A stretch of DNA of 64,000 bases from positions 62,001-126,000 of IMG/VR virus record IMGVR_UViG_3300027771_001853; one strand, written 5' to 3'. A program made the translations under genes and the position numbers. The notes below the pieces were generated by a model that was not told where the DNA came from, made no database searches, and saw only the letters and a list, made by a program, of their open reading frames with translations. This document shows, piece after piece, positions 30,060-64,000 of the stretch (position 1 is the stretch's first letter; the number at the start of each line of letters is the position of its first letter).

Positions 30060-30366
30060 CTTTTTTAGGTTTATTTTCTTCAAACCATTCAATAATAGCG
30101 TTTAGTGACCACACACCACCACTAGCTAACATCCCATCAAAAAACACATTACTATATGGGATGACGACTAATGTTTCTGTTGGTGAGAAGAAAACCAAAG
30201 AGAAAAAGAACCCTACCCATGTAGAAGTACACATCATACACCCTAACAAATCCCCAAAGAATTTTGAGTGTCTGGTTATCCAATTTCTTATATTGTCGAA
30301 TATACTCCCAAAAACCAAAATCTGAGACATCCCGTAAGCTGCTAAAATCCAAATAATTAATTCCAT
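30052..30366 (-). CDS. DUF1360-like membrane protein
   Basis: IFDNIRNW...LLGCMMCTSTWVG with hydrophobic helices. Confidence 0.65.
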   Translation of the reverse strand: MELIIWILAAYGMSQILVFGSIFDNIRNWITRHSKFFGDLLGCMMCTSTWVGFFFSLVFFSPTETLVVIPYSNVFFDGMLASGGVWSLNAIIEWFEENKPKKDE

Positions 30367-30379
30367 ATTTTTTTATTGT

Positions 30380-31715: not shown

Positions 31716-31719
31716 TTCT

Positions 31720-32499: not shown

Positions 32500-32535
32500 A
32501 ACATCTATTTATATGTAGAAATATAACACTATTAA

Positions 32536-34828: not shown

Positions 34829-34834
34829 ATAGAA

Positions 34835-34863
34835 AATGTAACTATAGTTAGTTAGACTGTCAA
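34835..34863 (-). promoter_or_regulatory. sigma70-like promoter of primase with palindromic spacer
   Basis: TTGACA-N17-TACATT; perfect 12-bp palindrome TAACTATAGTTA at 34839-34850. Confidence 0.6.
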
Positions 34864-34864
34864 A

Positions 34865-35461
34865 CTACCAAAGTTTATTTTTTAACATGAAACCTCTAAC
34901 ACAAGTATATGCGTCGGTCATATCAAAATTTTCCTTTTTTAATGTGTTGTTTCTAGTGTATTGCCATACAATGTGAGGTTCTTTCTCTGCGACTTTTTCC
35001 CATACTATCATTTTCTTATCGCAACCTTTAGGGTATCCCCCAAATAATACTTTTTTACCATTTTTATTTTCTTTAAACAAAGAAGAGAAAGCACATTTTC
35101 TGGATTCGTAGGTTGAGATGAATTCTGGTACTATCCCTAAAACATCATAAACCACTTTACAAATCATAGAGTTATACCTTAAAAGTGTCCCCACAGTGTA
35201 AACATTATTAGATGTCAAAAGTGGTTCTTCTATTATAACTTTATATATTCCAAAATCTTTAACCTGTTCTAATTTTTCTTTAAAAGCGTCAGCTTTTTTG
35301 AGTAGGTGTTCTATTTTATTTTCTGGTTGTGGTTTAATTACTGGAGAAAAATGGCTCAATTCCAGTAGTCTTTGTTCGAAATTATCGAACAAGGCCCAAC
35401 CTATGGTTTTAGTTGATATATCTAAACCCAGTACTTTTAGTGATGAATCTTTTTTAGTCAT
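34865..35461 (-). CDS. RuvC-like Holliday junction resolvase
   Basis: VLGLDISTKTIGWA, IIEEP, DMTDAY (RNase H-fold acidic tetrad). Confidence 0.8.
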   Translation of the reverse strand: MTKKDSSLKVLGLDISTKTIGWALFDNFEQRLLELSHFSPVIKPQPENKIEHLLKKADAFKEKLEQVKDFGIYKVIIEEPLLTSNNVYTVGTLLRYNSMICKVVYDVLGIVPEFISTYESRKCAFSSLFKENKNGKKVLFGGYPKGCDKKMIVWEKVAEKEPHIVWQYTRNNTLKKENFDMTDAYTCVRGFMLKNKLW

Positions 35462-50500: not shown

Positions 50501-53500
50501 CAGACCAAATAACCCGTAAAGACCCTCCATCATTGGTGCTGTCTGGTATAGGTCAGTAGATGAATCACAAACACCTAATCTTATAGGTATTTTATTACCT
50601 AACACCACATTAGTCGCTCCTCCACTAGCGTGGGTTTGCCAGAATGACGCTGTAAGAAAATTCCTTACACTCATCTCTTTAATTGCTGAATCATCCACTA
50701 ACATCCATAGTTGATTACTTATGTGTGTAGGGTGGGTAAACATTAAATTATTACTAAATAAATCTGCAGCTGTTTGTCCATATGCTGTAGCAGGTGATTG
50801 TGACCCTAGTAACCATAATTCTATAATTGTGTTTTCATCAGTTTTTAGTTTTCCAGCAATTTCTGCTACTATTCCTGGTGGTCCAAAGGCTGCTGTTTCG
50901 TATGAATACGAACTAGTTTTAAACTGCAACATATTAGTTAAACAACATAACGTAATTTTTGCACAAGCAGCTTCACCAACATTATACCCATGTATAGGGT
51001 ACCTTTGGTCTTGTACCGATAAAGAAGTATTAGATGCTAGGGGTCCGAACCAAGGCATGTTAATAATTTCATCAGGAACTAATGATGGGTCAACCCTAGT
51101 AAACGCAACATCCACTAATCCGGTATTATCTGGGGTCGCTGCCCCTATTGTTGCGTCACATTCACAACTTCCTCCACCTCCATTTGTTGTGGTTTGTGTT
51201 ACCGTATCAAAATCACAAGGATTAAATAGGGCTCTAGGAGCCACTTGTGAGATTATACCACTATGTCCTTTGTTAGGACCGGTTGGGGGTACGGGACCAT
51301 CTTCACTTTCATAACCTCCTGCCCTTTGTTCTGTACACACAGCAATATCAAATTTGGTACATAATGTCATACAATTAGAGGCAAACTCTGCTGCGGCAAC
51401 ACTATCACAAAATCCTTGTCCGTCTGTTTGGTGTATTTCAAAACCATTTGGGTAGGCCAGACATGGAGCAGGACAAGCAGGACCTGGGGATGAAGCAATT
51501 GCGAAGGTTCCTGGTGAACTAGAGTATGGTGTTATGTTCCCCCATAAGGTAAATGGATGTCCTGCTCCTCCATGGGTACATGTATTAATAAATGAAATAC
51601 TAGTATCTCCAGTCCAACAAGACACACAGTCACCAGGAGAAAAAGGGGTATGAGCTAGATTGTAATCACCTATACCAGTGGATACTTGATATTCCCATTG
51701 GGTTTGAGCTGGTAAACATTCACAAGGGTCCATTAGTTGAGCACAAGGATAATACTCCTGATAACAAGCTTTACCACCTAAATTAAATATACCATCCTTA
51801 AATATTTCTGGACTTGTTGTTGCTGATGTTGTACCGGTAACTGGTGGGTTTTCTGGTATAAATGTAGCGTCATTACAATCAGCACCTTTCCAAAGATTAT
51901 TACCCCCATCAAAAGGTAATTGGTAATTAGTGGTACTACCTGAACATGGCATGTGTAACCAGTGGTTAGCTAACAATTGGGTTATTTCACTTGGATTATA
52001 GAGTATGTAGTTAACATTTGTCTGTAGTTGGTAACACCCATACCCCTCTACAGTAACTAAGGTATTAACCCCTTGTTGTTGTATATCTTGCCAATAACCC
52101 AAGTTCCACATAGCAATAAGATTTGCTGGTGTTTGTGTCACACTGAGTCCTATATTCCCCAATGGAGAAAAGTACCCACCTTGGACTGTATCACATGGGC
52201 ACACCGTATTACCAGTAAGAATGTCTTCCATCCCACCACAACCAGCATGGAAAGTCTCACAACAAACACCACTGTACACTATCGAGGTTGCTGTCATTGC
52301 TCCTGAAAAAGATACAGTGTTTTGGTCGTATGAAAGGGTCATTCCACTAACAAATAAAGTGGTGTCATGTCCCCACATACTACCGTATTGGTTTGTTAGT
52401 AGATTTGGTCTATGTGTACCGTCAGTACAACTCCAAGTGGTAGCACTTTGTATAAAGGTATTTCCGGTAATTCCTGACCAACTGGTGGTCGCTGAATAAG
52501 CACTGGTACCACCAGTACAACCAGCAAACCCCCAATCCACACAATAATGAACCGTACCTTGTGTCATTCCTGTTCCTGGACAATTCCAACATGTCGAGAG
52601 TCCTCCCCCGTCTATTATTGACGGTGGTGGGAATAATGAACTTGGACCACTTATTAAATCATGACCACTCACAAAGTTATATGTTGGTGTATTACCAGTT
52701 GTTAGTGTGAAATGGTATACCGCCGTATACGCTGAAGTCATACCTGTTGTAGACCAATCAGTTTCAAAAAGTGACTGGTAACTATTGTAAGTGTGAGGGT
52801 CAGAACCATTATTAAAATTCCACAAATCTTCACCTGCTTCACTACAAGGACCTTGTATTAAAATAGCGTCTGGATTATTCAAATAAATGTCCGGTGTACC
52901 ATCTCCATTAATATCTATAGTATTATCGGTTGTATTATCCACAACGTAATAGGTAAGCCCTGAATTAGGGTCTGCTGTATTACCTTGGATACCGGCTAAC
53001 ATACCTGTCATCGCACTAAACCAAAAGCTGGTTTGTGGTGGGTCAGTACACCCAGTACTAGTATAATACACATCACTAGTATAACTTTGACCATTTATTT
53101 CTATATTAGCAGTCCAGTTTGTATGACCTGTACTAGCAGAAAATGTATCTTCACAATTATAACAATGATTAGCTAATGTATCGTATAATGGTGGTCTTGC
53201 ACAATCAATATAAGAACCTAAACATGGTACATCATCACATACAGGTTCGTGTTTATAAGGGAATTTATACCTATGAAAAATAGAATTTTCAAATCTTACA
53301 CCACCTTGCCAAATAGTTGTAGCTGGTATGAATTGTTCCATTAATCTTATCCAGTAATCACCAATCTTACTAGTGTAGTCTATCATTTTTTGGTAGGTAT
53401 ATTTACTACTATCAACCCCACACGTTACCAAATAATTGTTTATATAATCGTCATAAACATTTTGTAAAGTAGGGTAACCCCCACCTTTCGCGTCATCTAT

Positions 53501-55771
53501 AGTTAAACGATTCTTAACATTTATTAAAACCTTATAGAATTGTGACGCAAATTCAAAGAAACTCATTGTGGAAGCGTTTATCTTAATTTCGGTATTATCT
53601 ACCCCACCTAAACTTGGATATGGTGGGGAAACTAACGCTTTAAGACCAAACGGACACCCATATTTCCTTGAGTGGTTCCAAACGTCCCACTCCAATCCTT
53701 GACCTACATTCATGAATAGTTCCACATTCTTAACATTCATAACTAATCTTTCATCGTCTGTAAAATATTTTGTGCCTCTATCTCTTAGACTGTAGTATCT
53801 TCTTTGGAATGTGTCGTTTTCTTCTACCCATGATTTTTTATTATCGACAGTTCTTGTTATGTCGAACCCATCCATCATAGATGGGAATCTTCTAAATCTA
53901 TTTAAATAAGGTTCACCATAAGTAAAAGCGTTTAATTTAGTTTTAACTGTTGGGCTATTCCCAGTAAAAACAGATTTACTGAAATCAGTTACCCTTCTAC
54001 CTCTATGTTCTAAAGTTTGTTCAAACCATCCTGCCCCAGCTTGGAACCAACTGTCGGTACCAACTTGTGGGACAATTGGGAATCCTTGGTCATTTACGGG
54101 GAAATCTCTTCTAGCATAAGGAATATCAGACACTAATGATTTCGTACCAAAAGTATAACCACTTATAGTTGTAGGTATGTAAGGTGCTGTGGTACTAGGT
54201 TGTGTAGCCGTAAACCCAGTTATTCTTACTGGTATTTCTTGCACATAGGTACCACCGGACATTTTCCCCCATGTGGTATTAAAATTCTTCATGTTAATAC
54301 GTTGACCAGCAACATACACATGTTCGTTAAATTCTATTAGTGCTTCGGGAGCACCAATAAACCTTAACATAAATTCTATAGCTTTCCTTGTACCTTTTGA
54401 TTTAAATAGATAGGCTGTATTTAGAATTAATCTTCTATACAAGTCCACATCTAACTCTGCTGGTGTTTTATTACTTACCTCACCACTATATAAAGACTCT
54501 TCTTTTTTCGCTTCTAAGCCAAAAACCGAATCTAAAAAACTATCTTCACTAATAGCTGATGGTGTTTTCCACCCAATAACTTGAGCTAGATTTTTTAATA
54601 AAGCGTCTGGTACATTATCTTGTTTACTATAACTAACATTATTCATGTAAGCTAAACCTTCTATATATTTTTTAACCTCATCAAAACTTCTACCATAAAT
54701 CTGTAAAACTTTTTCTACCTTGTGTTCTGGGGTATCAAATTCTTTTAAGGCTGCAGTAGTTAGGAATCTAGAAATAAGGTTAGTTTTTTCTCTATCCAAT
54801 GCGTCACCAATATCATATAACGAAGTCAAATAAGCCCCAAAAGTAGCTCCTGATATCATAATATTCCAATCGTCTTGCATAGGCCATGTTACTAACTCGG
54901 TAGCCCCAAAGACTTCACCATCTTCCGTTGTTTTCTTTATCTGGAATGTCGAGGTGTATTTTGGGACCGTACTCCTACTTAAAAGATACTGTTCTACATC
55001 AGACATAGAATTGAATATCTCTTCTATTCTAGTTTCTGATAGTTTTACTTGGTAATCCAATAAGGTTGTCCCTGTAATACTACTAGCCCCACTAAATGGG
55101 TTACCTTGGACTATAAAACTTAGTCTACTGTCTGTGGAAGCTGTCGGTGGTGCGTATGACAGTACTGGGTAATTGTTACCTTGTACAGATATGACATAAT
55201 CAGTGAATTTTTTAGTTAAATTACGATATTCACTTGTTCTATTATCACTAGTAGGTAGATTACCTTTTGTCGTAAACTCAATATTAAATGGGTTATTTAA
55301 TCTTGATGACCCAACACTAAAAGTAGCCTCATTCACATTAGGGTCGTAAGTATAACCACTACTAGTATTACCACTAAGTAAATTAAGACCCACTCTATTA
55401 ACGTGTATCACAGCTGGGAAATTTCTTATGACATTAAGAACGGAAACCCTGAATTTTTCTTTTAGGGACCCGAATTGGGTAAAGTTAGTAATCTTGGACC
55501 TATCGTAATTTACAAATACTTCTAATCTATTAGAAACTAATTTTAATGATTCTTCTACCGATTCTATATTAAGACTACTTAACGTGATTGGTTCAGAAAA
55601 ACTACCTAAATCGAAATCTCTATCATCTTTAGTGGGTACAGAATCAGTAACAGCGAAATTACCCAAAGTGAATTGGGGTGTTCCTGTCACATATTGATTA
55701 CCTACTAGATAATCACTGAATGTCCCTGCTCCATTACCAGGTCTTAATTTGTTGTTCTCTCCGTTAGCCAT
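47552..55771 (-). CDS. giant (2739 aa) baseplate wedge-like protein with Cys-rich central insertion
   Basis: VPDALLKNLAQVIGW and LILNTAYLFKSKGTRKAIEFMLRFIG (P2 gpI/T4 gp7-like KGT motif), EQFIPATT; Cys-rich low-complexity middle. Confidence 0.7.
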   Translation of the reverse strand: MANGENNKLRPGNGAGTFSDYLVGNQYVTGTPQFTLGNFAVTDSVPTKDDRDFDLGSFSEPITLSSLNIESVEESLKLVSNRLEVFVNYDRSKITNFTQFGSLKEKFRVSVLNVIRNFPAVIHVNRVGLNLLSGNTSSGYTYDPNVNEATFSVGSSRLNNPFNIEFTTKGNLPTSDNRTSEYRNLTKKFTDYVISVQGNNYPVLSYAPPTASTDSRLSFIVQGNPFSGASSITGTTLLDYQVKLSETRIEEIFNSMSDVEQYLLSRSTVPKYTSTFQIKKTTEDGEVFGATELVTWPMQDDWNIMISGATFGAYLTSLYDIGDALDREKTNLISRFLTTAALKEFDTPEHKVEKVLQIYGRSFDEVKKYIEGLAYMNNVSYSKQDNVPDALLKNLAQVIGWKTPSAISEDSFLDSVFGLEAKKEESLYSGEVSNKTPAELDVDLYRRLILNTAYLFKSKGTRKAIEFMLRFIGAPEALIEFNEHVYVAGQRINMKNFNTTWGKMSGGTYVQEIPVRITGFTATQPSTTAPYIPTTISGYTFGTKSLVSDIPYARRDFPVNDQGFPIVPQVGTDSWFQAGAGWFEQTLEHRGRRVTDFSKSVFTGNSPTVKTKLNAFTYGEPYLNRFRRFPSMMDGFDITRTVDNKKSWVEENDTFQRRYYSLRDRGTKYFTDDERLVMNVKNVELFMNVGQGLEWDVWNHSRKYGCPFGLKALVSPPYPSLGGVDNTEIKINASTMSFFEFASQFYKVLINVKNRLTIDDAKGGGYPTLQNVYDDYINNYLVTCGVDSSKYTYQKMIDYTSKIGDYWIRLMEQFIPATTIWQGGVRFENSIFHRYKFPYKHEPVCDDVPCLGSYIDCARPPLYDTLANHCYNCEDTFSASTGHTNWTANIEINGQSYTSDVYYTSTGCTDPPQTSFWFSAMTGMLAGIQGNTADPNSGLTYYVVDNTTDNTIDINGDGTPDIYLNNPDAILIQGPCSEAGEDLWNFNNGSDPHTYNSYQSLFETDWSTTGMTSAYTAVYHFTLTTGNTPTYNFVSGHDLISGPSSLFPPPSIIDGGGLSTCWNCPGTGMTQGTVHYCVDWGFAGCTGGTSAYSATTSWSGITGNTFIQSATTWSCTDGTHRPNLLTNQYGSMWGHDTTLFVSGMTLSYDQNTVSFSGAMTATSIVYSGVCCETFHAGCGGMEDILTGNTVCPCDTVQGGYFSPLGNIGLSVTQTPANLIAMWNLGYWQDIQQQGVNTLVTVEGYGCYQLQTNVNYILYNPSEITQLLANHWLHMPCSGSTTNYQLPFDGGNNLWKGADCNDATFIPENPPVTGTTSATTSPEIFKDGIFNLGGKACYQEYYPCAQLMDPCECLPAQTQWEYQVSTGIGDYNLAHTPFSPGDCVSCWTGDTSISFINTCTHGGAGHPFTLWGNITPYSSSPGTFAIASSPGPACPAPCLAYPNGFEIHQTDGQGFCDSVAAAEFASNCMTLCTKFDIAVCTEQRAGGYESEDGPVPPTGPNKGHSGIISQVAPRALFNPCDFDTVTQTTTNGGGGSCECDATIGAATPDNTGLVDVAFTRVDPSLVPDEIINMPWFGPLASNTSLSVQDQRYPIHGYNVGEAACAKITLCCLTNMLQFKTSSYSYETAAFGPPGIVAEIAGKLKTDENTIIELWLLGSQSPATAYGQTAADLFSNNLMFTHPTHISNQLWMLVDDSAIKEMSVRNFLTASFWQTHASGGATNVVLGNKIPIRLGVCDSSTDLYQTAPMMEGLYGLFGLSNDISSPPSQIGMAGDHMTTSHWYSGWHGMGGYMQGAAYEIFHCNDGNLTSSEGASISHMYQGLAVGGPYTSGVLWDGNSSVSEPPNINNPLGQNGAGYDLNPLVGLGYSECWSTQFQSYCRRDTVQTNYGNLVFVVHDNFDAMVTTQGELDGLVPTKPCPQGGGEPAISRTLQSYLPQVFEPSEPLGVALSEGGTFEFDYGAFLEDKMPLYPDNAYEIFRSEPYIIMNSKSLNSGLKDLKYNNPDIRTHFGGAEFQTFTHNDNTEYQVGWRKEIQNEDNAQFINFPSVNQREDFEKSLKEQQIAGIESYNLFMQSKEYPIKWESVLQWAQRSVGNPWFSNSTIHTAPDGSFSGITIRPDSFYSLEEQGHAYYVPINDPATEIVGTTWSSWPQFTADKSGFTQSYTGYTDYSLSGTETTQMFDLYFNYSAFTGTTLIPLSNKSPLDSHLIGIDDSKIRAAILPESLGCNGGPTEINTQEGGIVYAPTRDGKYRIQFKAVLDVIYEDNSWCDYVNRFYKKEELDYSYPSNNYEYKELINSAIILKGGRVLQSPTIEIDPKTLVNNLEGTIADKYTNIKPYWRSNPATGYNTGGINDFYFRIYLTNQSGQSETTLTEYTLTTSELVRSRADDYLTYDLIETDKDINTMSCSGSTSEILHKSFDVNLDTGPILLSGDTDVIRLKYEAYWSSNPKDTGSTKTCAFKVNLGRKEPTNAEDSSSPWVRITRRPYDLPTINKEFTWKKDEKNKPNIINLPSGEQKDLATVGKLYINTSEVKSDYVNPNGFISITPRNFNNQTFLDIPSKGYNGPMVLEKQPGRATNLWSYTLSNEYKKNTPKITDYYINTDKSIEWEGLKLRWNLPYQNRAQTTERSVFPSVDNSYVIKTTFRSKMFKQSMFDHFIVINPSENDFTERDDYTVNVQQRLKGDFNKTVTVAQPSQDCDKRVYLSSEGIIIDGKRAKISSTSYNLNTPNNTPIIGDRKKLR

Positions 55772-55774
55772 ATA

Positions 55775-56680
55775 CTATACAATATTATTGAAAGCTTTAC
55801 TAAAATCTATATTATCTCCCCTATCTTGACGTACTTCATACAATGAATTACCAAACTCATCTCTTTGTTCGAATAAATTATATTGTTTAAATATATTATT
55901 ATCTTTATCGTATAAAGTGTATATTCCGTCAGTAATAGATTTTGTTTGATTACCATATAATGCTATAGCTAAACTATCTAAATCGTAATCAACCATTTCT
56001 ATTTCCATACACACAGGATTAAATTGAGTGTTACTTAATATAACTTCTTGATTTGGGTGTCCTATATATGGTAATGCGTGAGGTTTATTTGTTGGTGCTG
56101 TGGTGGGTGTTAGTGTACAGAATAATAAATTACTTCCACCGTTTACGTATCTATACCTAATAGCTTTTTGGTTACTATTAGTCATGTTTTGTGTTATTGG
56201 TTCACAGAAAAAATTAGATGTAACTATTCTATATAAATTAGGTATTTTAGTACCGTCAGCATTTAAATATTCTATTCTAAAACCTACAAGACCATTATTA
56301 ACAAATTTATTTCTATACTCTGGTGGCACATTATTAATATCAAATATAACACCCTTTACGTTAGGTAGTGAGGATAGTACACCACAATCCGCTAATGGTG
56401 TTCTTATTTCAGCTGGTTTAATATACAGAGTGTATATCCCTTTATCTTTAAATTGGGTTGCTGGTAATTGTAGATTGTATAACCCACCCAATAATTCTAT
56501 ATTAGGGTTACCACCCGTAGTGGTATTATGATAATATGGTGTTAAAATAGATGAAGCGTCCAATTTTCTTATAACTGGTACTTCGGTAGCGTCTCTCGAT
56601 GAGGTGTATACCATTAATATATCAACGTCGTCTGGTGATACATCTGAAGGTCTTTTAATTCCGTATGTTCCTAATGCCAT
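55775..56680 (-). CDS. structural-module protein
   Basis: 301 aa globular ORF coupled to both neighbours. Confidence 0.7.
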   Translation of the reverse strand: MALGTYGIKRPSDVSPDDVDILMVYTSSRDATEVPVIRKLDASSILTPYYHNTTTGGNPNIELLGGLYNLQLPATQFKDKGIYTLYIKPAEIRTPLADCGVLSSLPNVKGVIFDINNVPPEYRNKFVNNGLVGFRIEYLNADGTKIPNLYRIVTSNFFCEPITQNMTNSNQKAIRYRYVNGGSNLLFCTLTPTTAPTNKPHALPYIGHPNQEVILSNTQFNPVCMEIEMVDYDLDSLAIALYGNQTKSITDGIYTLYDKDNNIFKQYNLFEQRDEFGNSLYEVRQDRGDNIDFSKAFNNIV

Positions 56681-59600
56681 TTTGTACTTTTTGTTAATTC
56701 TTTGTTTATTTGGTAGAAACCATATCCATATATTTCTAATCCCCCGATAGTATCAATTTCACCTAACCTTTGGGAACTCTCAAATACTGACTGTTTGCCT
56801 CTGTTAATAAATAGTTCTGACTGAATTTCTACTTCCTGACAAACATTTATTAATACTTCCTCTTTTGTGATAGCCGACATACATAATTCAATTTCATGTC
56901 CATTGTATGGATTTAACCCCACAGGTACCTCCATTTCAGGGTAAATACAAGTCCCATCATCTACAAGAGCTAGATTATTATAGTTGGTTGCGAGTGGGTC
57001 TGTACACCCATATTGTGGGTAAACACAACAACTAGTATCGTTTATATTTGGTGGGGAACCGCAGCCCAATACTGTCGGTCCACCGTAATTTATCGCTAAT
57101 GGGTCATTACATCCTTGCCCTACACCACCATATTCACAACAACCATCATCCACATCAGGTAAACCTACATTATCCCCATTACAATTAAACTTCCAATTTG
57201 AAGCTAAAGGGTCTGTACAACCATAAATCGGAAATTCACAACAACATTCTGGGGTTGGTACACCACATGGATTAGGGTTCGCAACATCATCACAAGGAAG
57301 ATTAGCAGCTGGATTATAGTTGATGGCTGACGTATTCATACAACCAACTGTAGGGTCTGGACACCCAGTATCAAATGTAGCATATGGACAATAAAGAGGA
57401 TGTCCTGGGTCCATACACCCTGGAAGTTCTATAACACAACTACCATCATCTATCGAATAACTACTTGGTGAAGCATTTGGTGGGTTATATAAGTTTCCAT
57501 TACATGATATTAGTGGACCCGCAGGCATACCCGCTAATGCTGGATATATATTAGCGTAAGATACCGAAGCTGGGGTCGTATATGGGCCCACTTGAACAAT
57601 ACTTGTGTTTAGGTGGTCCCCAAATATAGGGGTGTTAGGTGGTGTTGCTAATGCACTTTCAAATTGACCTGAACCTACATTATATGTACATCCAGCGTCA
57701 AAGTAACAACAATCATTAGTACCACCGGCTGTATTACAAGGATTTATTGTAACCCAAGTTGCCGTTGCGTTTTGTGTCATTACAGTCAAATTTAAAGATA
57801 GAGAACCAGCAATAAAATTACCATTATCGTCCCATACCCCACGCATATAATTTGATGCCGCTGGGTCTAAACATGCTTGGATGGTGTACATACACCCACC
57901 AAAACCCTCTCCATTAATGTGGGCTGGTTTAGCACCATAATTTACTGTGTTTGCTGGTCCAGCGTTTCTTGGCCAGTTATCAACGTAATTTGAAGGATTG
58001 GTACCTAGATTATCCGCTACAACACCAGCACCTGCTGGGTTTGATGGTATGAATGAATCCATTGGGTCACCGTTGGAACTGTATTGGTTACCGTCGTCCA
58101 AACACCCATAAACATAAGGGGTACATGAGTGATGTCTCCAAGCATCTCCACCGTAGGTGGTGTCGTAGTTTCCATCTCCATAGTTTGGCCATAATGTTCC
58201 TGAATTTTTGTTTTGCCAATAATCACCAGCATCTACCTCATAATAAGTTCTTCCTCCCGTTGCTGGTGTGTAGGCAGCACCCCAATTGTCTGGATGCCCA
58301 GCACAAGTAATACCCATCGGTGCATTTGTAGTTGGGGCAGTAGTTGGGTCACAGGCACCGGAACCAACACCATTAGAACCAACAGTACCGGCATAAGGTC
58401 TAATAACATGACTAGGTGGGTCATTTGCAGATACACTAAAAGTACCGGTATACCAATCTTGAGGTACGTTACTATAATTACAATCACAGTAATATTGGTC
58501 CATACTAAATCCTTGCATTACTCTCTTGTTAAACTGCATATCTACAGTCAAAGCGTACCCATATCTATCTATTTGAGCTGAACAACAGTAATTAGGCCCA
58601 CTACCTATTTTCTGTCTATATTGTGGTTGTGGTTCTGATGTTAAAGCTTTTTGTTTACGTAATTCCTGTCTTAAATAATCCTGAGGTGTAAAATTATCTG
58701 TTAATAGGTGTGACCAATGTCTATTATCGTTTTTATTTGCATTTAAAGAAAATCCTTGTCTTTTTAATGGGGGACTAATAAAACTACTTGCACATTCTTC
58801 CCAATGTCCAGACTGTGCAGAAGGTTCAATACCAACACTACTACTAACATCGTATCCTGTTCTCCAATAACACTGTGTTTGTCCGGCTTGGTTAACCCAT
58901 TCCACTATCATCCCAGCATCATAATCAGTAGCACTTCCCACAGCAAGAGCTGATGGCGGTGGTGGTGATTGCCATACACCAAACCACCCTATAAATGCAC
59001 CAGTGGAATTAGGACACGGACATGGTGATACTGGTGTGTAGTTACAACATATGTGGTCTAAATTTTTATAATCTAAACCGTAGGTATACCCACTAAACGT
59101 TGTACCACCAGAAGTGTCAATATATAATATATCATTAACGGTATAACCTGTAGCTATATCTGTTATATAATTAATTACACCACTACCATCAGCACCGTTT
59201 AAAGGTACTGTTGCCCCAACCACATACATATTAGGTCCCCAGTTTTGTAATATTGTTAAATGACTCTCACTTTCTCCAGTTATATAAAAAGGCATAGTCG
59301 TACCGAAATTAGCTTGTGCGTTACTAAAATGGTCCATCACATCAGGGTTACTATCCCCGCTAAAGATATAGTCTTGGAATATACTTTCACACCCAATAGG
59401 TGTTTCAAACCCTGGGGGTTTTAGTTCTATGGTACCAAACATATTACCAGCTGAAGGATAATTCATGGTATATGGTAGAGTTATATGTTTTGAAACGTAT
59501 ACTGTCCCCCATGGGTTTATTTGTTGTAATGTCATCGTATACCCAGTTAAATTAGGTAGGTATGTATGTGTAGATATTGGTGTTGCTATTGATAGGTCGT

Positions 59601-60075
59601 CTATGGTAGAACCGTCACCCCAATTCAATGTATAGTTTGAGAATTCTAAGAATTTTTTAAATTGGAAATCTGAGCTATTAAAGACCGTAACATTGTAACC
59701 GTTCCCAGTATAAACAAAGTTTGTTACAACATCTCTTTGTAATACCATACCATCAAAAGGTGTATATACCCCTATATCGTTAAAGTCTTCAGTTAAACAA
59801 AGTGTTACTGTTGCTCCTGACACACATGGTGGTGTTGGTCCCTCTCCTCTAACTGGAGCAGTATTTCTCCATGTTTTACACCAATAATCCTTTTCTACTG
59901 GAGCTTTCCAATAATCACAAAACCCGTTTTGAAAGAAGAAACAGTCCTCACATTTTTGACCTGAGGGGACATCTTTAGATGTGTACGGTTGGTAGGCCAC
60001 AGGTAATTGTGGTGGAATAACATCAGTTCTTCCAGGGTAAAGTTTTCTTTTTATTTTTATATTAATCTTTTCCAT
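56671..60075 (-). CDS. multidomain virion protein: HiPIP-like module, PKD-like domain, CBM5/12-like module, GCxDP repeats
   Basis: GQKCEDCFFF..FCDYW..V..YWCKTW; LNWGDGS..HTY; W..YDAGMIVEW..CYW..EPS...W; about 7 GC(T/M/N)DP.A.NY-type repeats. Confidence 0.7.
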   Translation of the reverse strand: MEKINIKIKRKLYPGRTDVIPPQLPVAYQPYTSKDVPSGQKCEDCFFFQNGFCDYWKAPVEKDYWCKTWRNTAPVRGEGPTPPCVSGATVTLCLTEDFNDIGVYTPFDGMVLQRDVVTNFVYTGNGYNVTVFNSSDFQFKKFLEFSNYTLNWGDGSTIDDLSIATPISTHTYLPNLTGYTMTLQQINPWGTVYVSKHITLPYTMNYPSAGNMFGTIELKPPGFETPIGCESIFQDYIFSGDSNPDVMDHFSNAQANFGTTMPFYITGESESHLTILQNWGPNMYVVGATVPLNGADGSGVINYITDIATGYTVNDILYIDTSGGTTFSGYTYGLDYKNLDHICCNYTPVSPCPCPNSTGAFIGWFGVWQSPPPPSALAVGSATDYDAGMIVEWVNQAGQTQCYWRTGYDVSSSVGIEPSAQSGHWEECASSFISPPLKRQGFSLNANKNDNRHWSHLLTDNFTPQDYLRQELRKQKALTSEPQPQYRQKIGSGPNYCCSAQIDRYGYALTVDMQFNKRVMQGFSMDQYYCDCNYSNVPQDWYTGTFSVSANDPPSHVIRPYAGTVGSNGVGSGACDPTTAPTTNAPMGITCAGHPDNWGAAYTPATGGRTYYEVDAGDYWQNKNSGTLWPNYGDGNYDTTYGGDAWRHHSCTPYVYGCLDDGNQYSSNGDPMDSFIPSNPAGAGVVADNLGTNPSNYVDNWPRNAGPANTVNYGAKPAHINGEGFGGCMYTIQACLDPAASNYMRGVWDDNGNFIAGSLSLNLTVMTQNATATWVTINPCNTAGGTNDCCYFDAGCTYNVGSGQFESALATPPNTPIFGDHLNTSIVQVGPYTTPASVSYANIYPALAGMPAGPLISCNGNLYNPPNASPSSYSIDDGSCVIELPGCMDPGHPLYCPYATFDTGCPDPTVGCMNTSAINYNPAANLPCDDVANPNPCGVPTPECCCEFPIYGCTDPLASNWKFNCNGDNVGLPDVDDGCCEYGGVGQGCNDPLAINYGGPTVLGCGSPPNINDTSCCVYPQYGCTDPLATNYNNLALVDDGTCIYPEMEVPVGLNPYNGHEIELCMSAITKEEVLINVCQEVEIQSELFINRGKQSVFESSQRLGEIDTIGGLEIYGYGFYQINKELTKSTKWH

Positions 60076-60965
60076 TATGCTGTGGTCCATTGATAAAATT
60101 CAATGGGTGATGCTGGTGTTAACCCTACTCTGGTACCACCTAATTGAACCGTATAGGTAAAATTTGTTGTGTTTATAGGTACTTCATAAAAGAATGAACT
60201 AGCTGGTTGTGTTGTGGGTAATAATGGAGCTGGATTCTTATTGGTAAACTTGACCACTTCCCCCCTAATACCATTATAAAATTGAGCCGACATATAGAAC
60301 TTTCTTATATCTAATAATTTGGTATCCTTCAACCAATGTATATAGTACCCCTCGTCTTTTGTTGTTAATATGAATTCTGGTATATTAACGTCTCTTCTGG
60401 TTTCAATAATTACTTTATTTGGGTTAAACGGGTCTAGTACAGGAGGGTCAGGTATACCATCATTGTTAAAATCTACCGTATCCATTATTTGTTTCTCGGA
60501 CATTGTCGCGTTTAAAATCAATGACATGTATAAAGTTTGGTCACTCCTATTAGGTGAATCGTAAAAATCCATTTTAAAAAAACTTTTCTTAAAGGTTTTA
60601 TCATTTTGGTACATTTGCATTCTTGTAAACCCTTGTGTTTCGTAAGCTGATTCGTTTGGTGGTCCGAGAAAAGTAAAATAACTACCCGGATTAGTGGGTA
60701 CCCCTATGGATGGGTCTTGGAAGTAGAACTTATAATATACTGGTGGTGATGGGTCCGGTACCCCCAACGCTGGGTCCATGTTTTCTGATGGTCTATACCT
60801 TGTTACTTCATAATCTTTAGCCTTACCTATAACCTTATTTAATACATCATCTTCGTATGTTTTTATTAAATCTTCTCTCCCCGCGTCATCAAAATCTAAA
60901 CTTAGGGGTAAGATTACTTTTTGTTCCTTTGAGTCCACTCTTATTTTATATCTATTGACAGTCAT
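60075..60965 (-). CDS. structural-module protein
   Basis: 296 aa; FKKSFFKMDFYDSP, FYMSAQFYNG. Confidence 0.7.
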   Translation of the reverse strand: MTVNRYKIRVDSKEQKVILPLSLDFDDAGREDLIKTYEDDVLNKVIGKAKDYEVTRYRPSENMDPALGVPDPSPPVYYKFYFQDPSIGVPTNPGSYFTFLGPPNESAYETQGFTRMQMYQNDKTFKKSFFKMDFYDSPNRSDQTLYMSLILNATMSEKQIMDTVDFNNDGIPDPPVLDPFNPNKVIIETRRDVNIPEFILTTKDEGYYIHWLKDTKLLDIRKFYMSAQFYNGIRGEVVKFTNKNPAPLLPTTQPASSFFYEVPINTTNFTYTVQLGGTRVGLTPASPIEFYQWTTA

Positions 60966-62706
60966 CTTGTGTAAATTCTTCTAGTGGGTTATCACCTGTT
61001 AAGGTTTTCATTTCATAAACTTCTTGCCCTACCTGTCTTTTTATATAAAACCTAACATCTGTTTTAGGGTAATGAGACCCATTCATATATGGGTAGTCCA
61101 CACCTAACACACCATCTTCTAAAAACCCTATATCATATAGGTCCCTCCACTTCCATAAACCTTCTCTAGTAAAGTAGGTAGCATATCCAGGAATTGAGTC
61201 TTTATCTATGTGAGTATTAACATCTTTAGAGATGTTTTCTGGGTCACCTTCTTCAATATAAGAAGAGAAAACCCTTATAGGGACTTCGTAGTGTGGTGAA
61301 TACGTGTAACCTCTTTTTTCACTATTATTAGTGTCATTTACACCATTATTTGCTAAGTCTATAAGAAAAGCATTTTGATTCCAATTGAACTTATGGTGTA
61401 TCTTGGATATTTCTCTTTCTTTTAATTCAGAGATATTGTATTCTACGAATTCACCTCTTATCCTATCACCAATCACTAATGGGTCTCCACCGACAAAAGG
61501 TGTAGCTGCGTACGGGGTAGAAGGTACGTTTACATTATTAGGGTTAACACCGTCGTACCCAGTTCTAACTGTAGTATCTAAATAAGTGTCTGGAAAATTC
61601 CATGACCAACCATAATTGTGTGGATAATCAAAATACCCCTTTTTATTCCTTAAATTTACGGTAACGTATAGTTTAGTTAGTGGTCTTAATTGTACATCTC
61701 TAAGTTCGGAAACGTCAATATCCCTAGTAAACGAATATACATAAGCTGGATAAGAGTTTTTAACACTTAACCTACATTTTGACAATTCGTTAGGTACTAC
61801 TTGTTCAATTTTTTGTTTTGTTTTAAATACACCATCTTCAAACCCACACCTATTAATAACACAATCATCAACCATAGTTAATATTTTATGCCATACCACA
61901 TAATATTGTGACCGACTCTTTGGTTCTCCTGGTGTTATCATCCTTACAAATGTACCTAATGTATCGTTTGGTGGTGGTGTAGAACCAAATGCTTGAGAAA
62001 CACTGACATTAAAGACGTTTAATTTTGACCTGTATGACGAGGAACCAATACTATAGACTGGTATCTGTGCAGGCATGTTGGTGGTAAAGGTGTATGCTCC
62101 GTGAAAGTTTATTTCAACAAACTCCCCTTCATTTAATCCGTGTGGTGCACCACAATGAAATCTAATTAATTCTTTACCGTTTACACTAACATTTTCCACC
62201 CTAAACGGTATACCGTCAGAAGCCAGAAAATTTAAAGTGGTATCACCAATTAAGTCACCGTCACTATCTATTTGGTAGGCCATTGGTTCGTCCGGAGCAC
62301 ACGAATCTGGGTAACTCACATGGATATTCCAATTAGTTTTATCGGCAGAATACTCATCCATATCATCCCTTACTAAAGAAAATTCTTTGAATTGTGGGAA
62401 TCCTGGCCATGGTGTTTGTGGTGGGTCATTATAATATAATTCTTGGAATATCGATGTTTGTGAGGGGTCTGACGTACCAGAGTAAGTATTATTTAACAAA
62501 CTGTAAAATTTACCATACACTCTATAAATGCTAGTAGACTGTCTCTCAATGTAAAACCTTTGCGATTGAGCTACATCTACCGTCCTATCCCCTTGGATTA
62601 ATTCCCTATATTGTGTCTCTAGTGGAGCATTAACTATAATGTTTTCATCCTGTGAACCAACATATTTCTTACTCCCTACTTGTATTTTTAATTTATTACT
62701 ATTCAT
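60952..62706 (-). CDS. structural-module protein
   Basis: 584 aa; ERQSTSIYRVYGK, HGL..GE.V, WKWRDLYDIGF, DYPYMNGSHY. Confidence 0.7.
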   Translation of the reverse strand: MNSNKLKIQVGSKKYVGSQDENIIVNAPLETQYRELIQGDRTVDVAQSQRFYIERQSTSIYRVYGKFYSLLNNTYSGTSDPSQTSIFQELYYNDPPQTPWPGFPQFKEFSLVRDDMDEYSADKTNWNIHVSYPDSCAPDEPMAYQIDSDGDLIGDTTLNFLASDGIPFRVENVSVNGKELIRFHCGAPHGLNEGEFVEINFHGAYTFTTNMPAQIPVYSIGSSSYRSKLNVFNVSVSQAFGSTPPPNDTLGTFVRMITPGEPKSRSQYYVVWHKILTMVDDCVINRCGFEDGVFKTKQKIEQVVPNELSKCRLSVKNSYPAYVYSFTRDIDVSELRDVQLRPLTKLYVTVNLRNKKGYFDYPHNYGWSWNFPDTYLDTTVRTGYDGVNPNNVNVPSTPYAATPFVGGDPLVIGDRIRGEFVEYNISELKEREISKIHHKFNWNQNAFLIDLANNGVNDTNNSEKRGYTYSPHYEVPIRVFSSYIEEGDPENISKDVNTHIDKDSIPGYATYFTREGLWKWRDLYDIGFLEDGVLGVDYPYMNGSHYPKTDVRFYIKRQVGQEVYEMKTLTGDNPLEEFTQDDCQ

Positions 62707-64000
62707 CTGTAACCGGTAAATAACGTCTTCTTAGATTATCATAAGCACTTGCACCTCTTCTTAAACCAAAATAGTATTGGTGAAAATGACTTAGTCTATA
62801 TTCATTTACCGATGTGTTAGCTGTGAAACCCATATATATGGGGTCAACACCTTGAACAGCAAAATTTCCTGGTTGGCTGAAATCTCCGAATATCTGGGTC
62901 ACATTCCAATTATTATCCCAATCACCATAACCTCCTGTACCTGGAAGTTTCCATTGGTAGTACGGTATAGTTTGTGATTTAAGGTACCCTTCCGGTGGGC
63001 CTAGTAAACAATCCCTTAAACTTGGGTTATTTTGTATAAGATTAAATCGTGACCTTCTTTCGGTTACGTGATTACCAGCATTACCTATTAAGTCGAAACC
63101 ATAAGGGACACCACTTGTTGTACCTATAGAGTAGAATGGGTTAGATGGGTTTTCTTGTGGGTTTTCAAATGGAGCGTTACCAAATTCACAATTTTGTGCT
63201 ATTAATTGTGTAATATCACCATCCAATAATCTATTTTTTCTATTGTTACCTGAACCACCCCATATAGGTGAAGGGCCAAACCATCTATTTATATTAGTAA
63301 ATTGTAATTGCCAAAAATCCAGTTTATTTAATTTCCAATTAAATGTATGTTCTATAATTTCAGAAAAGTCTTGGTGGCTACTCGTTCTTATTTCTTCTAA
63401 TAAATAACATTCTGTGTCCCCAGTTAAACATTCTAGACAGTCATTTGTAGCACAAAAAGTTAAAGGACCTAGTTCCACAATTGTTGTTGGGAATAATATT
63501 CTACTTTCTACTATACCACCATTGGTTTTTTGGAACCCGTCGAAAGGTCCATCTAAAGCGGTAAGTAAACTGGTTGAGGATAACATCTCTGCTGGGGTAG
63601 AACGGTAGTAATATGTCCCTCCAGATACTGGTAAAGTAGGGTCTTTCCATATTAAAGAATCACAATATTCTTCGGTTGGGAGACCGTTACTCATATACCT
63701 ATTATTTTTAAAATTAAAGTGGTATAAACTACCTCTTAACCATGTATTAGATAATGTTCCGTTTGGGACTCCTTGACATAACCCATCATAAATATTTCTT
63801 CTTACTCTCCACTCATTTATAGCAAAGAATAATCTAGTCAAATTAGTCATTAATGTTATCATCATTACAATCTTCCCAGCCATAATACCGTAATAAGCCG
63901 TTTGCCATCCAACAGCTGCGGTAAACGGAATAAAAGCTAACGCAGTACATACTACTAAGTAAGCAAACATTGTGTTAACTACACTAGAGGGACCATCACC
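62699..64000 (-). CDS. structural-module protein, partial (5' end beyond window)
   Basis: Frame is open to position 64000; hydrophobic segment, then NTWLRGSLY, YYRSTP, FPTTIVELG, YYFGL. Confidence 0.7.
   Translation of the reverse strand, partial: GDGPSSVVNTMFAYLVVCTALAFIPFTAAVGWQTAYYGIMAGKIVMMITLMTNLTRLFFAINEWRVRRNIYDGLCQGVPNGTLSNTWLRGSLYHFNFKNNRYMSNGLPTEEYCDSLIWKDPTLPVSGGTYYYRSTPAEMLSSTSLLTALDGPFDGFQKTNGGIVESRILFPTTIVELGPLTFCATNDCLECLTGDTECYLLEEIRTSSHQDFSEIIEHTFNWKLNKLDFWQLQFTNINRWFGPSPIWGGSGNNRKNRLLDGDITQLIAQNCEFGNAPFENPQENPSNPFYSIGTTSGVPYGFDLIGNAGNHVTERRSRFNLIQNNPSLRDCLLGPPEGYLKSQTIPYYQWKLPGTGGYGDWDNNWNVTQIFGDFSQPGNFAVQGVDPIYMGFTANTSVNEYRLSHFHQYYFGLRRGASAYDNLRRRYLPVTDE

What the first reader, a model, noticed from the sequence alone, without database searches (positions are those of the whole stretch)
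59869..60006. HiPIP-like four-cysteine module inside a tail/baseplate-module protein
Seen: LPVAYQPY...GQKCEDCFFFQNGFCDYWKAPVEKDYWCKTW near the N-terminus of the 1135 aa protein. Known: high-potential iron-sulfur proteins have Y...Q.CxxCx(F/Y)...C....V....WCxxW binding [4Fe-4S]. Inference: the virion may display an Fe-S or other metal cluster, for redox sensing, iron carriage (Ferrojan-horse-like) or a structural role. I know of no description of this fusion.
Basis: partly seen in the sequence, partly recalled or inferred. Interest (0 to 1): 0.72.

Follow-up and report, generated by a model that had tools for sequence, protein, structure and literature searches.

The report
HiPIP-fold domain on phage baseplate protein
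The first ~70 residues of a 1134-residue protein in the baseplate gene cluster of an uncultured 298-kb jumbo myophage form a small domain with the fold, four cysteines and aromatic shell of bacterial high-potential iron-sulfur proteins, and the same signal-less domain recurs in many phage proteins, mostly head proteins, which suggests phage particles often carry such iron-sulfur knobs, though metal binding is untested.

Summary
The peptide is encoded at 59869-60006 on the minus strand, as residues 24-69 of a 1134-aa protein (window 56671-60075, true start at the second ATG).

- **Conservation.** The four Cys (42, 45, 53, 66) are invariant in 16 orthologues, down to 42% identity. Three are invariant and the fourth is present in 148 of 149 cluster representatives of a ~60-aa mobile domain.
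- **Sequence match.** The window's own copy misses the Pfam HiPIP cut-off (10.8 bits against 22). A profile of the family hits only HiPIPs among PDB sequences (best E 2.7e-4, all four ligand Cys aligned).
- **Fold match.** An AlphaFold model (pLDDT 95) matches only HiPIPs and HiPIP-like [4Fe-4S] subunits. In an unbiased scan of 48,161 PDB chains, all 11 chains with Z>=2 are of that kind.
- **Position in the protein.** It is the conserved N-terminal domain, not an insertion.
- **Gene context.** The gene lies four genes downstream of a gp6/J-like baseplate wedge gene, in synteny kept in 11 related viral contigs.
- **Other carriers.** Elsewhere the domain stands alone or is fused mostly to head proteins (prohead protease, portal or MuF-like).

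My best reading is a cluster-stabilised structural or assembly knob. [4Fe-4S] binding and function remain untested. I rate it a new variant of a known kind, of moderate to high interest.

The parts
56671..60075 (-). Gene for the 1134-aa carrier protein (stop codon at 56671-56673). The true start is the ATG at 60075, not the first ATG at 60090.
   Evidence: The TAATG overlap with the upstream stop, the start of the orthologues and the 1134-aa database copy agree.
59854..60048 (-). HiPIP-fold module, aa 10-74 (the modelled domain). It holds the conserved YPG...LP..Y lead-in, the four Cys and the aromatic shell.
   Evidence: AF2 pLDDT 95.3 with alignment A3. Foldseek and VIA hits are only HiPIPs. 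Profile against PDB. Column conservation.
59950..59952 (-). Cys42 codon, predicted cluster ligand 1
   Evidence: Invariant in 149 of 149. Aligned to the first Cys of the CxxC pair of the HiPIP chains. Coordinates.
59941..59943 (-). Cys45 codon, predicted cluster ligand 2
   Evidence: Invariant in 149 of 149. Aligned to the second Cys of the CxxC pair of HiPIPs.
59917..59919 (-). Cys53 codon, predicted cluster ligand 3
   Evidence: Present in 148 of 149. Aligned to the third Cys of HiPIPs.
59878..59880 (-). Cys66 codon, predicted cluster ligand 4, in the Y-W-C-x-x-W motif
   Evidence: Invariant in 149 of 149. Aligned to the fourth Cys in the G-W-C-x-x-W motif of HiPIPs.
59827..59868 (-). Variable Pro-rich linker (aa 70-83) between the module and the next conserved domain
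   Evidence: Orthologue alignment.
59026..59826 (-). Conserved N-terminal body (aa 84 to about 350) shared by all orthologues. Fold unknown; probably the part that anchors the protein in the baseplate (inference).
   Evidence: No Pfam, PHROG or PDB match. The Atlas search was uninformative.
56941..57903 (-). Cys-rich C-terminal region (aa 725-1045) with five C-x-[DN]-P-x-A-x-N-[YW]...DDGxC repeats. In distant relatives this region sits in a separate 906-aa gene.
56674..56898 (-). Conserved C-terminal tail (aa 1060-1134)
60075..60965 (-). Upstream gene p296, syntenic partner
60952..62706 (-). Upstream gene p584, syntenic partner
62699..64000 (-). 3' part of gene p1144. It runs past the window to genome position 128133. 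The next gene upstream, outside the window, is the gp6/J-like baseplate wedge subunit.
55775..56680 (-). Downstream gene p301, syntenic partner
47552..55771 (-). Downstream gene for a 2739-aa giant protein, syntenic partner
   Evidence: No PHROG match.

Best explanation
**Shown**
- Residues about 10-74 of the 1134-aa protein are a divergent, signal-less member of the high-potential iron-sulfur protein (HiPIP) fold family.
- The module joins the rest of the protein through a variable Pro-rich linker.
- The protein is encoded in the baseplate/fibre gene block of a jumbo contractile-tailed phage.

**Inferred**
- In the infected cell, the host Fe-S assembly machinery loads a [4Fe-4S] cubane onto Cys42, Cys45, Cys53 and Cys66. 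The phage encodes no IscA or IscU homologue.
- The conserved aromatic residues (Tyr28, Phe47, Trp56, Tyr64, Trp65, Trp69) bury the cluster as in HiPIPs. That shielding is what makes HiPIP clusters stable in air (established knowledge).
- The cluster acts as the core of a rigid ~60-aa knob that cannot fold without it.
- The knob serves as a structural or docking element at the virion-proximal N-terminus. The conserved 270-aa body anchors the protein, and the variable Cys-rich C-terminal repeats face outward.
- The same knob occurs on prohead-protease, portal/MuF-like and other carrier proteins (including ADP-ribosyltransferase fusions), and on its own, usually as the only cysteines in the protein. 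Its common role is therefore more likely a generic cofactor-stabilised assembly or interaction module than a tail-specific or electron-transfer function.
For: **Fold and homology**
- The A3 profile against PDB sequences gives HiPIPs as the top 14 hits (best E 2.7e-4). All four Cys and the C-x-F, C-x-x-[WF], W-C and C-x-x-W positions align.
- 71 of 149 members hit PF01355 (best E 1e-6).
- The AF2 model has pLDDT 95.3 and pTM 0.80.
- The top 14 Foldseek PDB hits are HiPIPs, with probability up to 0.97.
- VIA gives Z 5.6-6.2 over 52-61 of 65 residues.
- In the unbiased scan of 48,161 chains, only 11 reach Z>=2. All are HiPIPs or HiPIP-like [4Fe-4S] subunits of glycyl radical enzymes, and no zinc finger appears.
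- The top AFDB clusters are HiPIPs.

**Cysteine spacing is within the HiPIP range**
- The family shows 2/7/12, 2/8/12 and 2/9/12, up to 2/19/12.
- The HiPIP Iro uses Cys24, 27, 36 and 49, which is 2/8/12 (PMC10654088).
- The phiPsal1 copy has 2/16/12.

**A cluster site rather than disulfides**
- The median Cys content outside the module in 93 carriers is 0%.
- Seven aromatic positions are aromatic in 119 to 149 of 149 sequences.

**Context**
- A gp6/J-like wedge gene (phrog_219 8.5e-18, phrog_6 1.8e-17) lies four genes upstream, and a tail sheath gene is present (phrog_23 1.4e-52).
- Synteny is kept in 11 loci.
- The N-terminal 350 aa are conserved, while the rest is variable or split off.

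**Generic role**
- Among the 109 multidomain carriers, 20 hit phrog_80 'head maturation protease', several hit portal families and one hits a tail fibre family.
- The module occurs in the phiPsal1 'prohead protease'.
- BFVD hits include prohead protease, XkdF, SppA and zeta-toxin fusions.

**Precedent**
[quoted passage not shown] It is conserved and its function is unknown (PMC10721106).
Against: - No metal was or could be assayed. The complex prediction with a 4Fe-4S ligand was not run by the tool.
- The window's own sequence is below the Pfam gathering score.
- The Gly before [YW]-Cys that the aligned HiPIPs share is Tyr here.
- Z of about 6 and TM of about 0.5 are middling in absolute terms for a small domain.
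- The virion location of the protein rests on synteny only. Neither it nor its immediate neighbours match any PHROG, Pfam or PDB entry.
- The structural role is an argument from distribution, not a test.
Confidence: 0.55

Rival explanations
1. HiPIP-derived fold that no longer binds Fe-S. The four Cys hold a single Zn(II), or form two disulfides after lysis, and serve only as a fold staple.
For: - Cys4 sites in small viral domains often bind Zn (general knowledge).
- The Gly next to the fourth Cys, which packs against the cluster in the aligned HiPIPs, is replaced by Tyr.
- The second loop is shorter (x7) than in any HiPIP named here (x8 in Iro).
- The carrier protein is otherwise rich in Cys that probably form disulfides.
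Against: - Every structural neighbour in 48,161 PDB chains is a [4Fe-4S] protein, and none is a zinc finger.
- The aromatic shell typical of a buried cubane is conserved.
- In most carriers these are the only four Cys, and the proteins fold in the cytoplasm.
- Loop length varies from 7 to 19 while the rest is fixed, as in HiPIPs.
Confidence: 0.2
2. Redox or oxygen sensor. The cluster's oxidation state or its loss changes the conformation of the baseplate protein, tuning adsorption or triggering to the redox state of the environment or the cell surface.
For: - HiPIP clusters cycle between 2+ and 3+ at +50 to +500 mV (PMC10654088). That range is reachable in oxic or suboxic water.
- The module is tethered by a flexible linker.
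Against: - The same module sits on head-internal proteins and stand-alone peptides, where environmental sensing is implausible.
- No partner or effector domain co-occurs consistently.
- This was not testable here.
Confidence: 0.12
3. Iron carriage or siderophore-receptor mimicry ('Ferrojan horse'). The virion presents iron to exploit host iron-uptake receptors, or recycles host iron.
For: - The relatives appear to be marine: one orthologue comes from a Tara source.
- The hypothesis exists for tail-fibre iron.
- Each copy would carry 4 Fe.
Against: - A cubane buried in an aromatic shell at the virion-proximal N-terminus is not presented like a siderophore.
- The protein has no HxH motif of the T4 gp37 type.
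- The module is mostly on head proteins.
Confidence: 0.05
4. Chance cysteine pattern in a Cys-rich protein, with no domain.
For: - The protein has 50 Cys.
- The single-sequence Pfam hit is not significant.
Against: - 145 clusters carry the module at E<=1e-3.
- The Cys are invariant.
- The model is confident and the fold matches are specific.
Confidence: 0.01

Closest known systems
Bacterial HiPIPs (Pfam PF01355), especially the short ones Iro (Acidithiobacillus ferrooxidans) and PioC (Rhodopseudomonas palustris, PDB 6xyv)
   Same: - Same fold.
- Same order and near-identical spacing of the four Cys: 2/7/12 here against 2/8/12 in Iro.
- Same aromatic positions around the Cys.
- Similar size of about 55-65 aa.
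   Different: - No Tat signal and no periplasmic life.
- Not a free electron carrier but the N-terminal domain of a 1134-aa phage protein.
- Tyr replaces the Gly before the fourth Cys.
- A conserved phage-specific lead-in, YPDG..IP..LP..Y.
- Below the Pfam cut-off for this copy.
HiPIP-like [4Fe-4S] small subunits of glycyl radical enzymes (4-hydroxyphenylacetate decarboxylase 2y8n_B; benzylsuccinate synthase 4pkf_B; methylalkylsuccinate synthase 9o8u_B)
   Same: They are the only non-HiPIP structural neighbours. They are examples of the HiPIP fold recruited as a bound accessory part of a larger assembly rather than as a diffusible carrier (the role is from general knowledge).
   Different: Lower similarity (Z 2.3-3.6). 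They are cellular enzymes of anaerobes with no link to virions.
[4Fe-4S] domain of siphophage tail-tip proteins (lambda gpL; RcGTA gp13)
   Same: A cubane Fe-S cluster in a tail-end structural protein of a phage. It is conserved and its function is still unknown (PMC10721106).
   Different: - Different ligand spacing (Cys173, 182, 205 and 212).
- The domain is C-terminal and belongs to the hub-domain insertion.
- The cluster is reported as oxygen-sensitive.
- No fold similarity: the T1 tail-tip chain 9l9p_J scores only E 8 and TM 0.15.
- Siphophage tip, not myophage baseplate periphery.
Iron ions in the T4 long tail fibre tip (gp37 HxH motifs) and the 'Ferrojan horse' hypothesis
   Same: Iron carried by a tail appendage of a phage, discussed for marine phages.
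   Different: Mononuclear Fe held by His in a trimeric fibre (general knowledge). There is no HxH motif here, and the predicted cofactor is a Cys-ligated cubane.
Module in Pontimonas phage phiPsal1 'prohead protease' (phiPsal1_006) and PHROG phrog_80
   Same: The same domain family: tblastn E 4e-7, BFVD TM 0.74 and rmsd 1.4. This is the only cultured-phage copy found.
   Different: It sits near the N-terminus of a head-morphogenesis protein between the portal and major capsid genes. Its second loop has the canonical length (x16). The protein has no relation to the tail.

Membership tests
HiPIP (PF01355 / HiPIP fold) | Four Cys in the order C-x2-C ... C ... C, with the last gap about 12-14 residues, aligned to the cluster ligands | tested here: met
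   C42-x2-C45-x7-C53-x12-C66. All four align to the Cys of 1eyt, 1hlq, 1hpi and 3hip. Spacing census. Iro has 2/8/12.
HiPIP (PF01355 / HiPIP fold) | The sequence scores above Pfam's gathering threshold (22 bits) | tested here: not met
   The window copy scores 10.8-11.5 bits, E 0.38-0.64. The six-frame genome scan with PF01355 gave no hit.
HiPIP (PF01355 / HiPIP fold) | Homology at profile level | tested here: met
   The A3 profile against PDB gives HiPIPs as the top 14 hits, best E 2.7e-4. 71 of 149 members hit PF01355, best E 1e-6. No HMM-HMM comparison was run.
HiPIP (PF01355 / HiPIP fold) | HiPIP three-dimensional fold | tested here: met
   The pLDDT-95 model, Foldseek and VIA at Z about 6 covering whole chains. 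All 11 neighbours in the wide scan are of the HiPIP type.
HiPIP (PF01355 / HiPIP fold) | Aromatic shell around the cluster (Tyr upstream of the CxxC, aromatic after Cys2, after Cys3, before and after Cys4) | tested here: met
   Y28, F47, W56, Y64, W65 and W69 are aromatic in 129-149 of 149 sequences. Positions F47, W56, W65 and W69 align to F, F, W and W of HiPIPs. The equivalence of Y28 to the conserved HiPIP Tyr is inferred.
HiPIP (PF01355 / HiPIP fold) | Gly immediately before [YW]-Cys4 | tested here: not met
   The aligned HiPIPs have G-W-C. The phage family has Y-W-C, with Tyr in 121 of 149.
HiPIP (PF01355 / HiPIP fold) | Tat-exported soluble periplasmic electron carrier | tested here: not met
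   The protein has no signal peptide: it begins MEKINIKIKRK and leads straight into the module. A regex screen of the carriers' N-termini gave only three loose matches, none resembling a Tat signal on inspection. The domain is fused to large phage proteins.
HiPIP (PF01355 / HiPIP fold) | Binds [4Fe-4S] cycling 2+/3+ at high potential | not testable with these tools
This needs spectroscopy and electrochemistry.
lambda gpL-type tail-tip Fe-S domain | C-terminal domain with the gpL Cys pattern (Cys173, 182, 205, 212) and the hub-domain-insertion fold | tested here: not met
   The spacing and position differ. The only tail-tip chain in the Foldseek list has E 8 and TM 0.15.
T4 gp37-type iron-binding fibre tip | Repeated HxH motifs | tested here: not met
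   There are no HxH motifs in the 1134-aa protein.
Contractile-tail baseplate or fibre protein | Encoded in the baseplate module, with a conserved N-terminus and a variable distal part | tested here: inconclusive
   Synteny with the gp6/J-like wedge gene and the conservation pattern fit. There is no sequence or structure match to any known baseplate or fibre protein.

The most novel reading that the evidence does not exclude
Tailed phages share an undescribed, widespread family of signal-less mini-HiPIP domains: at least 145 clusters at 50% identity, either stand-alone or fused to prohead protease, portal/MuF-like, toxin-cargo and, here, baseplate proteins. These domains carry air-stable [4Fe-4S] clusters inside or on virions. 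Fe-S cofactors would then be a common structural ingredient of phage particles in oxic water, tying virion assembly to the host's Fe-S machinery and locking iron in viral particles.
Probability: 0.45. Interest if true: 0.75.

Novelty: new variant of a known kind. Interest (0 to 1): 0.62.

Why it matters
- **A second kind of virion Fe-S site.** Fe-S clusters in virions are known only from the siphophage tail-tip protein family (gpL), whose cluster is oxygen-sensitive and of unknown function. A HiPIP-type site would be evolutionarily independent, and its chemistry suits particles that drift in oxygenated seawater.
- **A broad family, not a single fusion.** The module turns up on head, cargo and tail proteins and as free peptides, so it gives a family-wide target.
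- **A testable handle.** One cultured carrier exists (Pontimonas phage phiPsal1), and the ~60-aa domain is easy to express. Whether phage particles carry cubane clusters, and what they are for, becomes directly testable.
- **Links to host physiology and ocean iron.** It would link phage assembly to host ISC/SUF capacity and add a defined term to estimates of iron bound in marine viruses.
- **Annotation.** It would give a name to a domain that Pfam and PHROGs currently leave unrecognised or hidden inside 'head maturation protease' families.

Tried and rejected
- **Single-sequence searches.** PF01355 was sub-threshold. phmmer and the shallow profile A2 against PDB gave only spurious disintegrin and GH73 hits, which I rejected as Cys-composition matches.
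- **AF2 with the 16-orthologue alignment** gave pLDDT 38 and was unusable. Only the 149-sequence alignment gave a model.
- **Complex prediction with a 4Fe-4S ligand** was counted but not folded. It is no evidence either way.
- **The search for related loci with A3** failed because no conserved stretch was available.
- **PF01355 against the whole phage genome** found nothing.
- **Phage-encoded Fe-S assembly genes** (IscA/HesB, IscU/NifU) were not found.
- **A second copy of the module in the genome** was not found.
- **Annotation of the carrier and its neighbours.** PHROGs, Pfam, PDB phmmer and the Atlas search all came back empty. tblastn of the carrier against cultured phages gave no match.
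- **Idea that the module helps oxidise the many other Cys of the protein.** Rejected, because most carriers have no Cys outside the module.
- **Insertion hypothesis.** Rejected.
- **gpL-type and gp37-type iron sites.** Rejected.
Full report
**1. The observation**

The plus strand of 59869-60006 is full of stops. It lies in the minus-strand ORF 56671..60090.

The first ATG gives 1139 aa. Three facts point to the ATG at 60075 as the real start. It overlaps the stop of the upstream gene as TAATG. All orthologues begin there. The identical database protein P0001 has 1134 aa.

In 1134-aa numbering the module has Cys42, Cys45, Cys53 and Cys66, with spacing 2/7/12.

The window is positions 62001-126000 of a 297.6-kb IMG/VR virus record, estimated 93% complete, with about 35% G+C.

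**2. Is it more than chance?**

A word-indexed search with the whole protein found 16 relatives:
- four full-length relatives at about 70% identity;
- one 713-aa relative at 68% identity covering 64% of the query;
- eleven relatives of about 640 aa that share only the first ~350 residues.

All of them keep the four Cys and the surrounding aromatic residues.

An exhaustive phmmer search with the first 100 residues of the 1139-aa ORF against 1.84 billion cluster representatives returned 145 proteins at E<=1e-3. In these the matched stretch is a ~60-aa unit in one of four arrangements:
- alone, in proteins of 100 aa or fewer (34 proteins);
- N-terminal (25);
- C-terminal (21);
- internal (63).

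The family consensus is R-x-Y-P-D-G-x-x-I-P-x-x-L-P-x-x-Y ... G-Q-x-C-x-N-C-x-F ... C-x-x-W-x-A-x-V-R-x-x-Y-W-C-x-x-W. The commonest Cys spacings are 2/7/12 and 2/9/12, with rare second gaps up to 19. So this is a real, mobile domain. It is also the conserved N-terminal domain of this protein family, not an insertion.

**3. What the domain is**

Sequence evidence:
- Alone, the window's copy is below Pfam's HiPIP threshold (10.8-11.5 bits against 22). It finds no HiPIP in PDB by phmmer.
- At family level the picture is clear. 71 of 149 members have PF01355 as a hit at E<=1 (best 1e-6), far ahead of any other family.
- A profile of the 149 sequences searched against all PDB sequences returns HiPIPs as the top 14 of its 15 matches. 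The best is E 2.7e-4 for the Thermochromatium tepidum protein.
- In those alignments the four Cys sit on the four HiPIP Cys. The positions C-x-F, C-x-x-[W/F], W-C and C-x-x-W are also shared.

Structure evidence:
- AlphaFold with only the orthologues failed (pLDDT 38). With the deep alignment it gave pLDDT 95.3 and pTM 0.80.
- Foldseek against PDB lists 14 HiPIP entries first, with probability up to 0.97. Next comes the HiPIP-like small subunit of 4-hydroxyphenylacetate decarboxylase.
- VIA-align gives Z 5.6-6.2 over 52-61 of 65 residues, spanning the whole HiPIP chains.
- The most telling result is a scan of 48,161 PDB representatives that does not depend on Foldseek. Only 11 chains reach Z>=2. 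All of them are HiPIPs or HiPIP-like [4Fe-4S] subunits of glycyl radical enzymes, and no zinc finger, rubredoxin or other Cys4 fold appears.
- The AlphaFold DB fold clusters agree.

The short second loop is not an obstacle. The HiPIP Iro ligates its cluster with Cys24, 27, 36 and 49, which is spacing 2/8/12 (PMC10654088). The copy in phage phiPsal1 has 2/16/12.

Differences from cellular HiPIPs:
- no credible Tat signal (a regex screen gave only three loose matches, none resembling a signal on inspection);
- Tyr instead of the Gly before the fourth Cys;
- a phage-specific lead-in motif.

**4. Does it bind a cluster?**

This could not be tested. The ligand-complex job was not folded, and model coordinates are not exposed to me. 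The indirect evidence favours a cubane:
- the ligand positions are invariant;
- seven positions are aromatic in 119-149 of 149 sequences, four of them aligned to the aromatic residues that flank the HiPIP ligands;
- the median cysteine content outside the module in 93 multidomain carriers is 0%, so the four Cys are normally the only ones in a cytoplasmically folded protein;
- only [4Fe-4S] proteins are structural neighbours.

I put [4Fe-4S] binding at about 0.7. Zn, or no metal, takes most of the rest.

The phage has no IscA or IscU homologue. Loading would therefore depend on the host.

**5. What protein carries it?**

The carrier and its immediate neighbours match nothing in PHROGs, Pfam or PDB sequences.

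Context comes from outside the window. On the minus strand the gene order is: a 613-aa gp6/J-like baseplate wedge subunit (phrog_219 8.5e-18, phrog_6 1.8e-17), then p1144, p584, p296, the HiPIP protein, p301, p2739 and further large proteins, one of which has an SprB repeat. A 1135-aa tail sheath gene lies 36 kb away (phrog_23 1.4e-52).

The order from the wedge gene to the HiPIP gene is kept in all 11 related IMG/VR loci. It continues through p301 and p2739 in every locus long enough to show them.

The protein has these parts:
- the module (aa 10-74);
- a variable Pro-rich linker (aa 70-83);
- a conserved body to about aa 350;
- a variable middle;
- five Cys-rich C-x-D-P-x-A-x-N-Y repeats (aa 735-1045) and a conserved tail.

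In the more distant relatives the gene is split. One product is a ~626-aa protein with the module and the conserved body. The other is a 906-aa protein with the repeats and the tail.

A conserved N-terminus with a variable distal part is the usual plan of baseplate-attached fibres, which is an inference. The 'tail/baseplate module' label is thus supported by synteny only.

**6. Where else the module occurs**

- Of the 109 multidomain carriers, 20 match phrog_80 ('head maturation protease'), whose profile positions about 48-134 cover the module. Thirteen match phrog_2859 (unknown function), several match portal families, and one matches a tail fibre family.
- One carrier combines an ADP-ribosyltransferase domain with the module.
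- Another is a MuF/'capsid maturation protease'-like protein. Its body has relatives in 901 cultured phage records, mostly actinophages, and those matches do not extend to the module.
- Among 50,697 cultured phage records, the module itself was found by tblastn only in Pontimonas phage phiPsal1. There it sits near the N-terminus of the 'prohead protease' gene, between the portal and capsid genes.
- BFVD shows the same fold in uncultured-phage proteins named prohead protease, XkdF, SppA and zeta toxin. It also shows it in small proteins that UniProt's automatic rules already call 'High potential iron-sulfur proteins family profile domain-containing', for example in Synechococcus phage S-SRM01.
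- Contexts examined for two other carriers are phage-like.
- No paper describing a HiPIP-type domain in phage proteins was found.

**7. Mechanism**

*Shown:* a HiPIP-fold domain; a promiscuous distribution across phage proteins, mostly head-morphogenesis proteins; an N-terminal, linker-tethered position in a baseplate-cluster protein.

*Inferred:* the host loads a [4Fe-4S] cluster. The aromatic shell makes it air-stable, as in HiPIPs (established knowledge of the family). The cluster is the folding core of a rigid knob that serves as a structural or docking element.

I prefer this reading because the module has no constant partner domain. It occurs inside heads as well as on tails. The HiPIP fold has also been recruited as a bound accessory subunit elsewhere, in the glycyl radical enzymes.

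The nearest functional precedent in phages is the [4Fe-4S] of lambda gpL. It has a different fold and ligand pattern, and its role is still unknown (PMC10721106).

Rivals are a Zn or disulfide staple (0.2), a redox sensor (0.12), iron carriage (0.05; the protein has no HxH motifs) and chance (about 0.01).

**8. Verdict**

Cofactor and function remain open. I classify it as a new variant of a known kind: the HiPIP superfamily in a signal-less, phage-specific, fused form. Interest is about 0.6. The family-wide reading is the more interesting one.

Noticed in passing
window 13371-14546 (-): A phage-encoded protein matches the Druantia defence protein DruA (PF14236, E 1.4e-23). A defence-system component in a jumbo phage genome could be a decoy or anti-defence gene, or could serve superinfection exclusion.
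   Followed up: no
window 1346-2497 (-), 14860-15840 (-), 11503-12783 (-): The phage carries a full S-adenosylmethionine synthetase (MetK, three Pfam domains), a DnaJ chaperone and a leucine-rich-repeat protein.
   Followed up: no
window 56941-57903 (-), aa 725-1045 of the carrier; also L012:11922-14642: Cys-rich repeats of the form G-C-x-D-P-x-A-x-N-Y ... D-D-G-x-C. The same repeat makes up most of an unrelated 1113-aa protein, P0017. In relatives it sits in a separate 906-aa gene. The carrier has 50 Cys (4.4%), the highest share among the 12 other structural-block proteins compared. Pfam gave no hit on these repeats in the whole-protein scan.
   Followed up: partly
L012:9977-14642 compared with window 56671-60075: Gene fusion or fission within the lineage. 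There is one 1134-aa gene here and in close relatives, but two genes (about 626 aa and 906 aa) in the more distant relatives.
   Followed up: partly
window 47552-55771 (-) and genome G000 138805-145422, 145732-150699, 181607-187540, 187576-201114: A run of giant minus-strand ORFs of 2739, 2205, 1655, 1977 and 4512 aa. The 2739-aa one, the only one scanned, matched no PHROG.
   Followed up: no
window 27747-35461: A replication and recombination block (SbcC, SbcD, exonuclease, primase, RuvC-like resolvase) directly abuts the structural block. The ribonucleotide reductase, DnaB helicase, UvsX-like and SSB genes sit just upstream of the baseplate wedge gene. The structural genes are therefore interleaved with replication genes.
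   Followed up: partly
window 45223-47547 (-): The 774-aa protein has a sub-threshold SprB repeat (23.2 bits against a 28-bit cut-off), a repeat type of Bacteroidota gliding-motility adhesins. Together with the 35% G+C this is a weak hint at a Bacteroidota host.
   Followed up: no
P0023 (748 aa, metagenomic carrier of the module): This protein combines an ADP-ribosyltransferase exoenzyme domain, the HiPIP-like module and an Hva1_TUDOR domain. BFVD shows zeta-toxin and ParB/sulfiredoxin fusions. The module therefore also travels with toxin-like domains whose phage context resembles head cargo (an inference).
   Followed up: partly
PHROG phrog_80, profile positions about 48-134: A large PHROG annotated 'head maturation protease' includes the HiPIP-like module in its profile. 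The domain is thus hidden inside an existing family annotation.
   Followed up: partly
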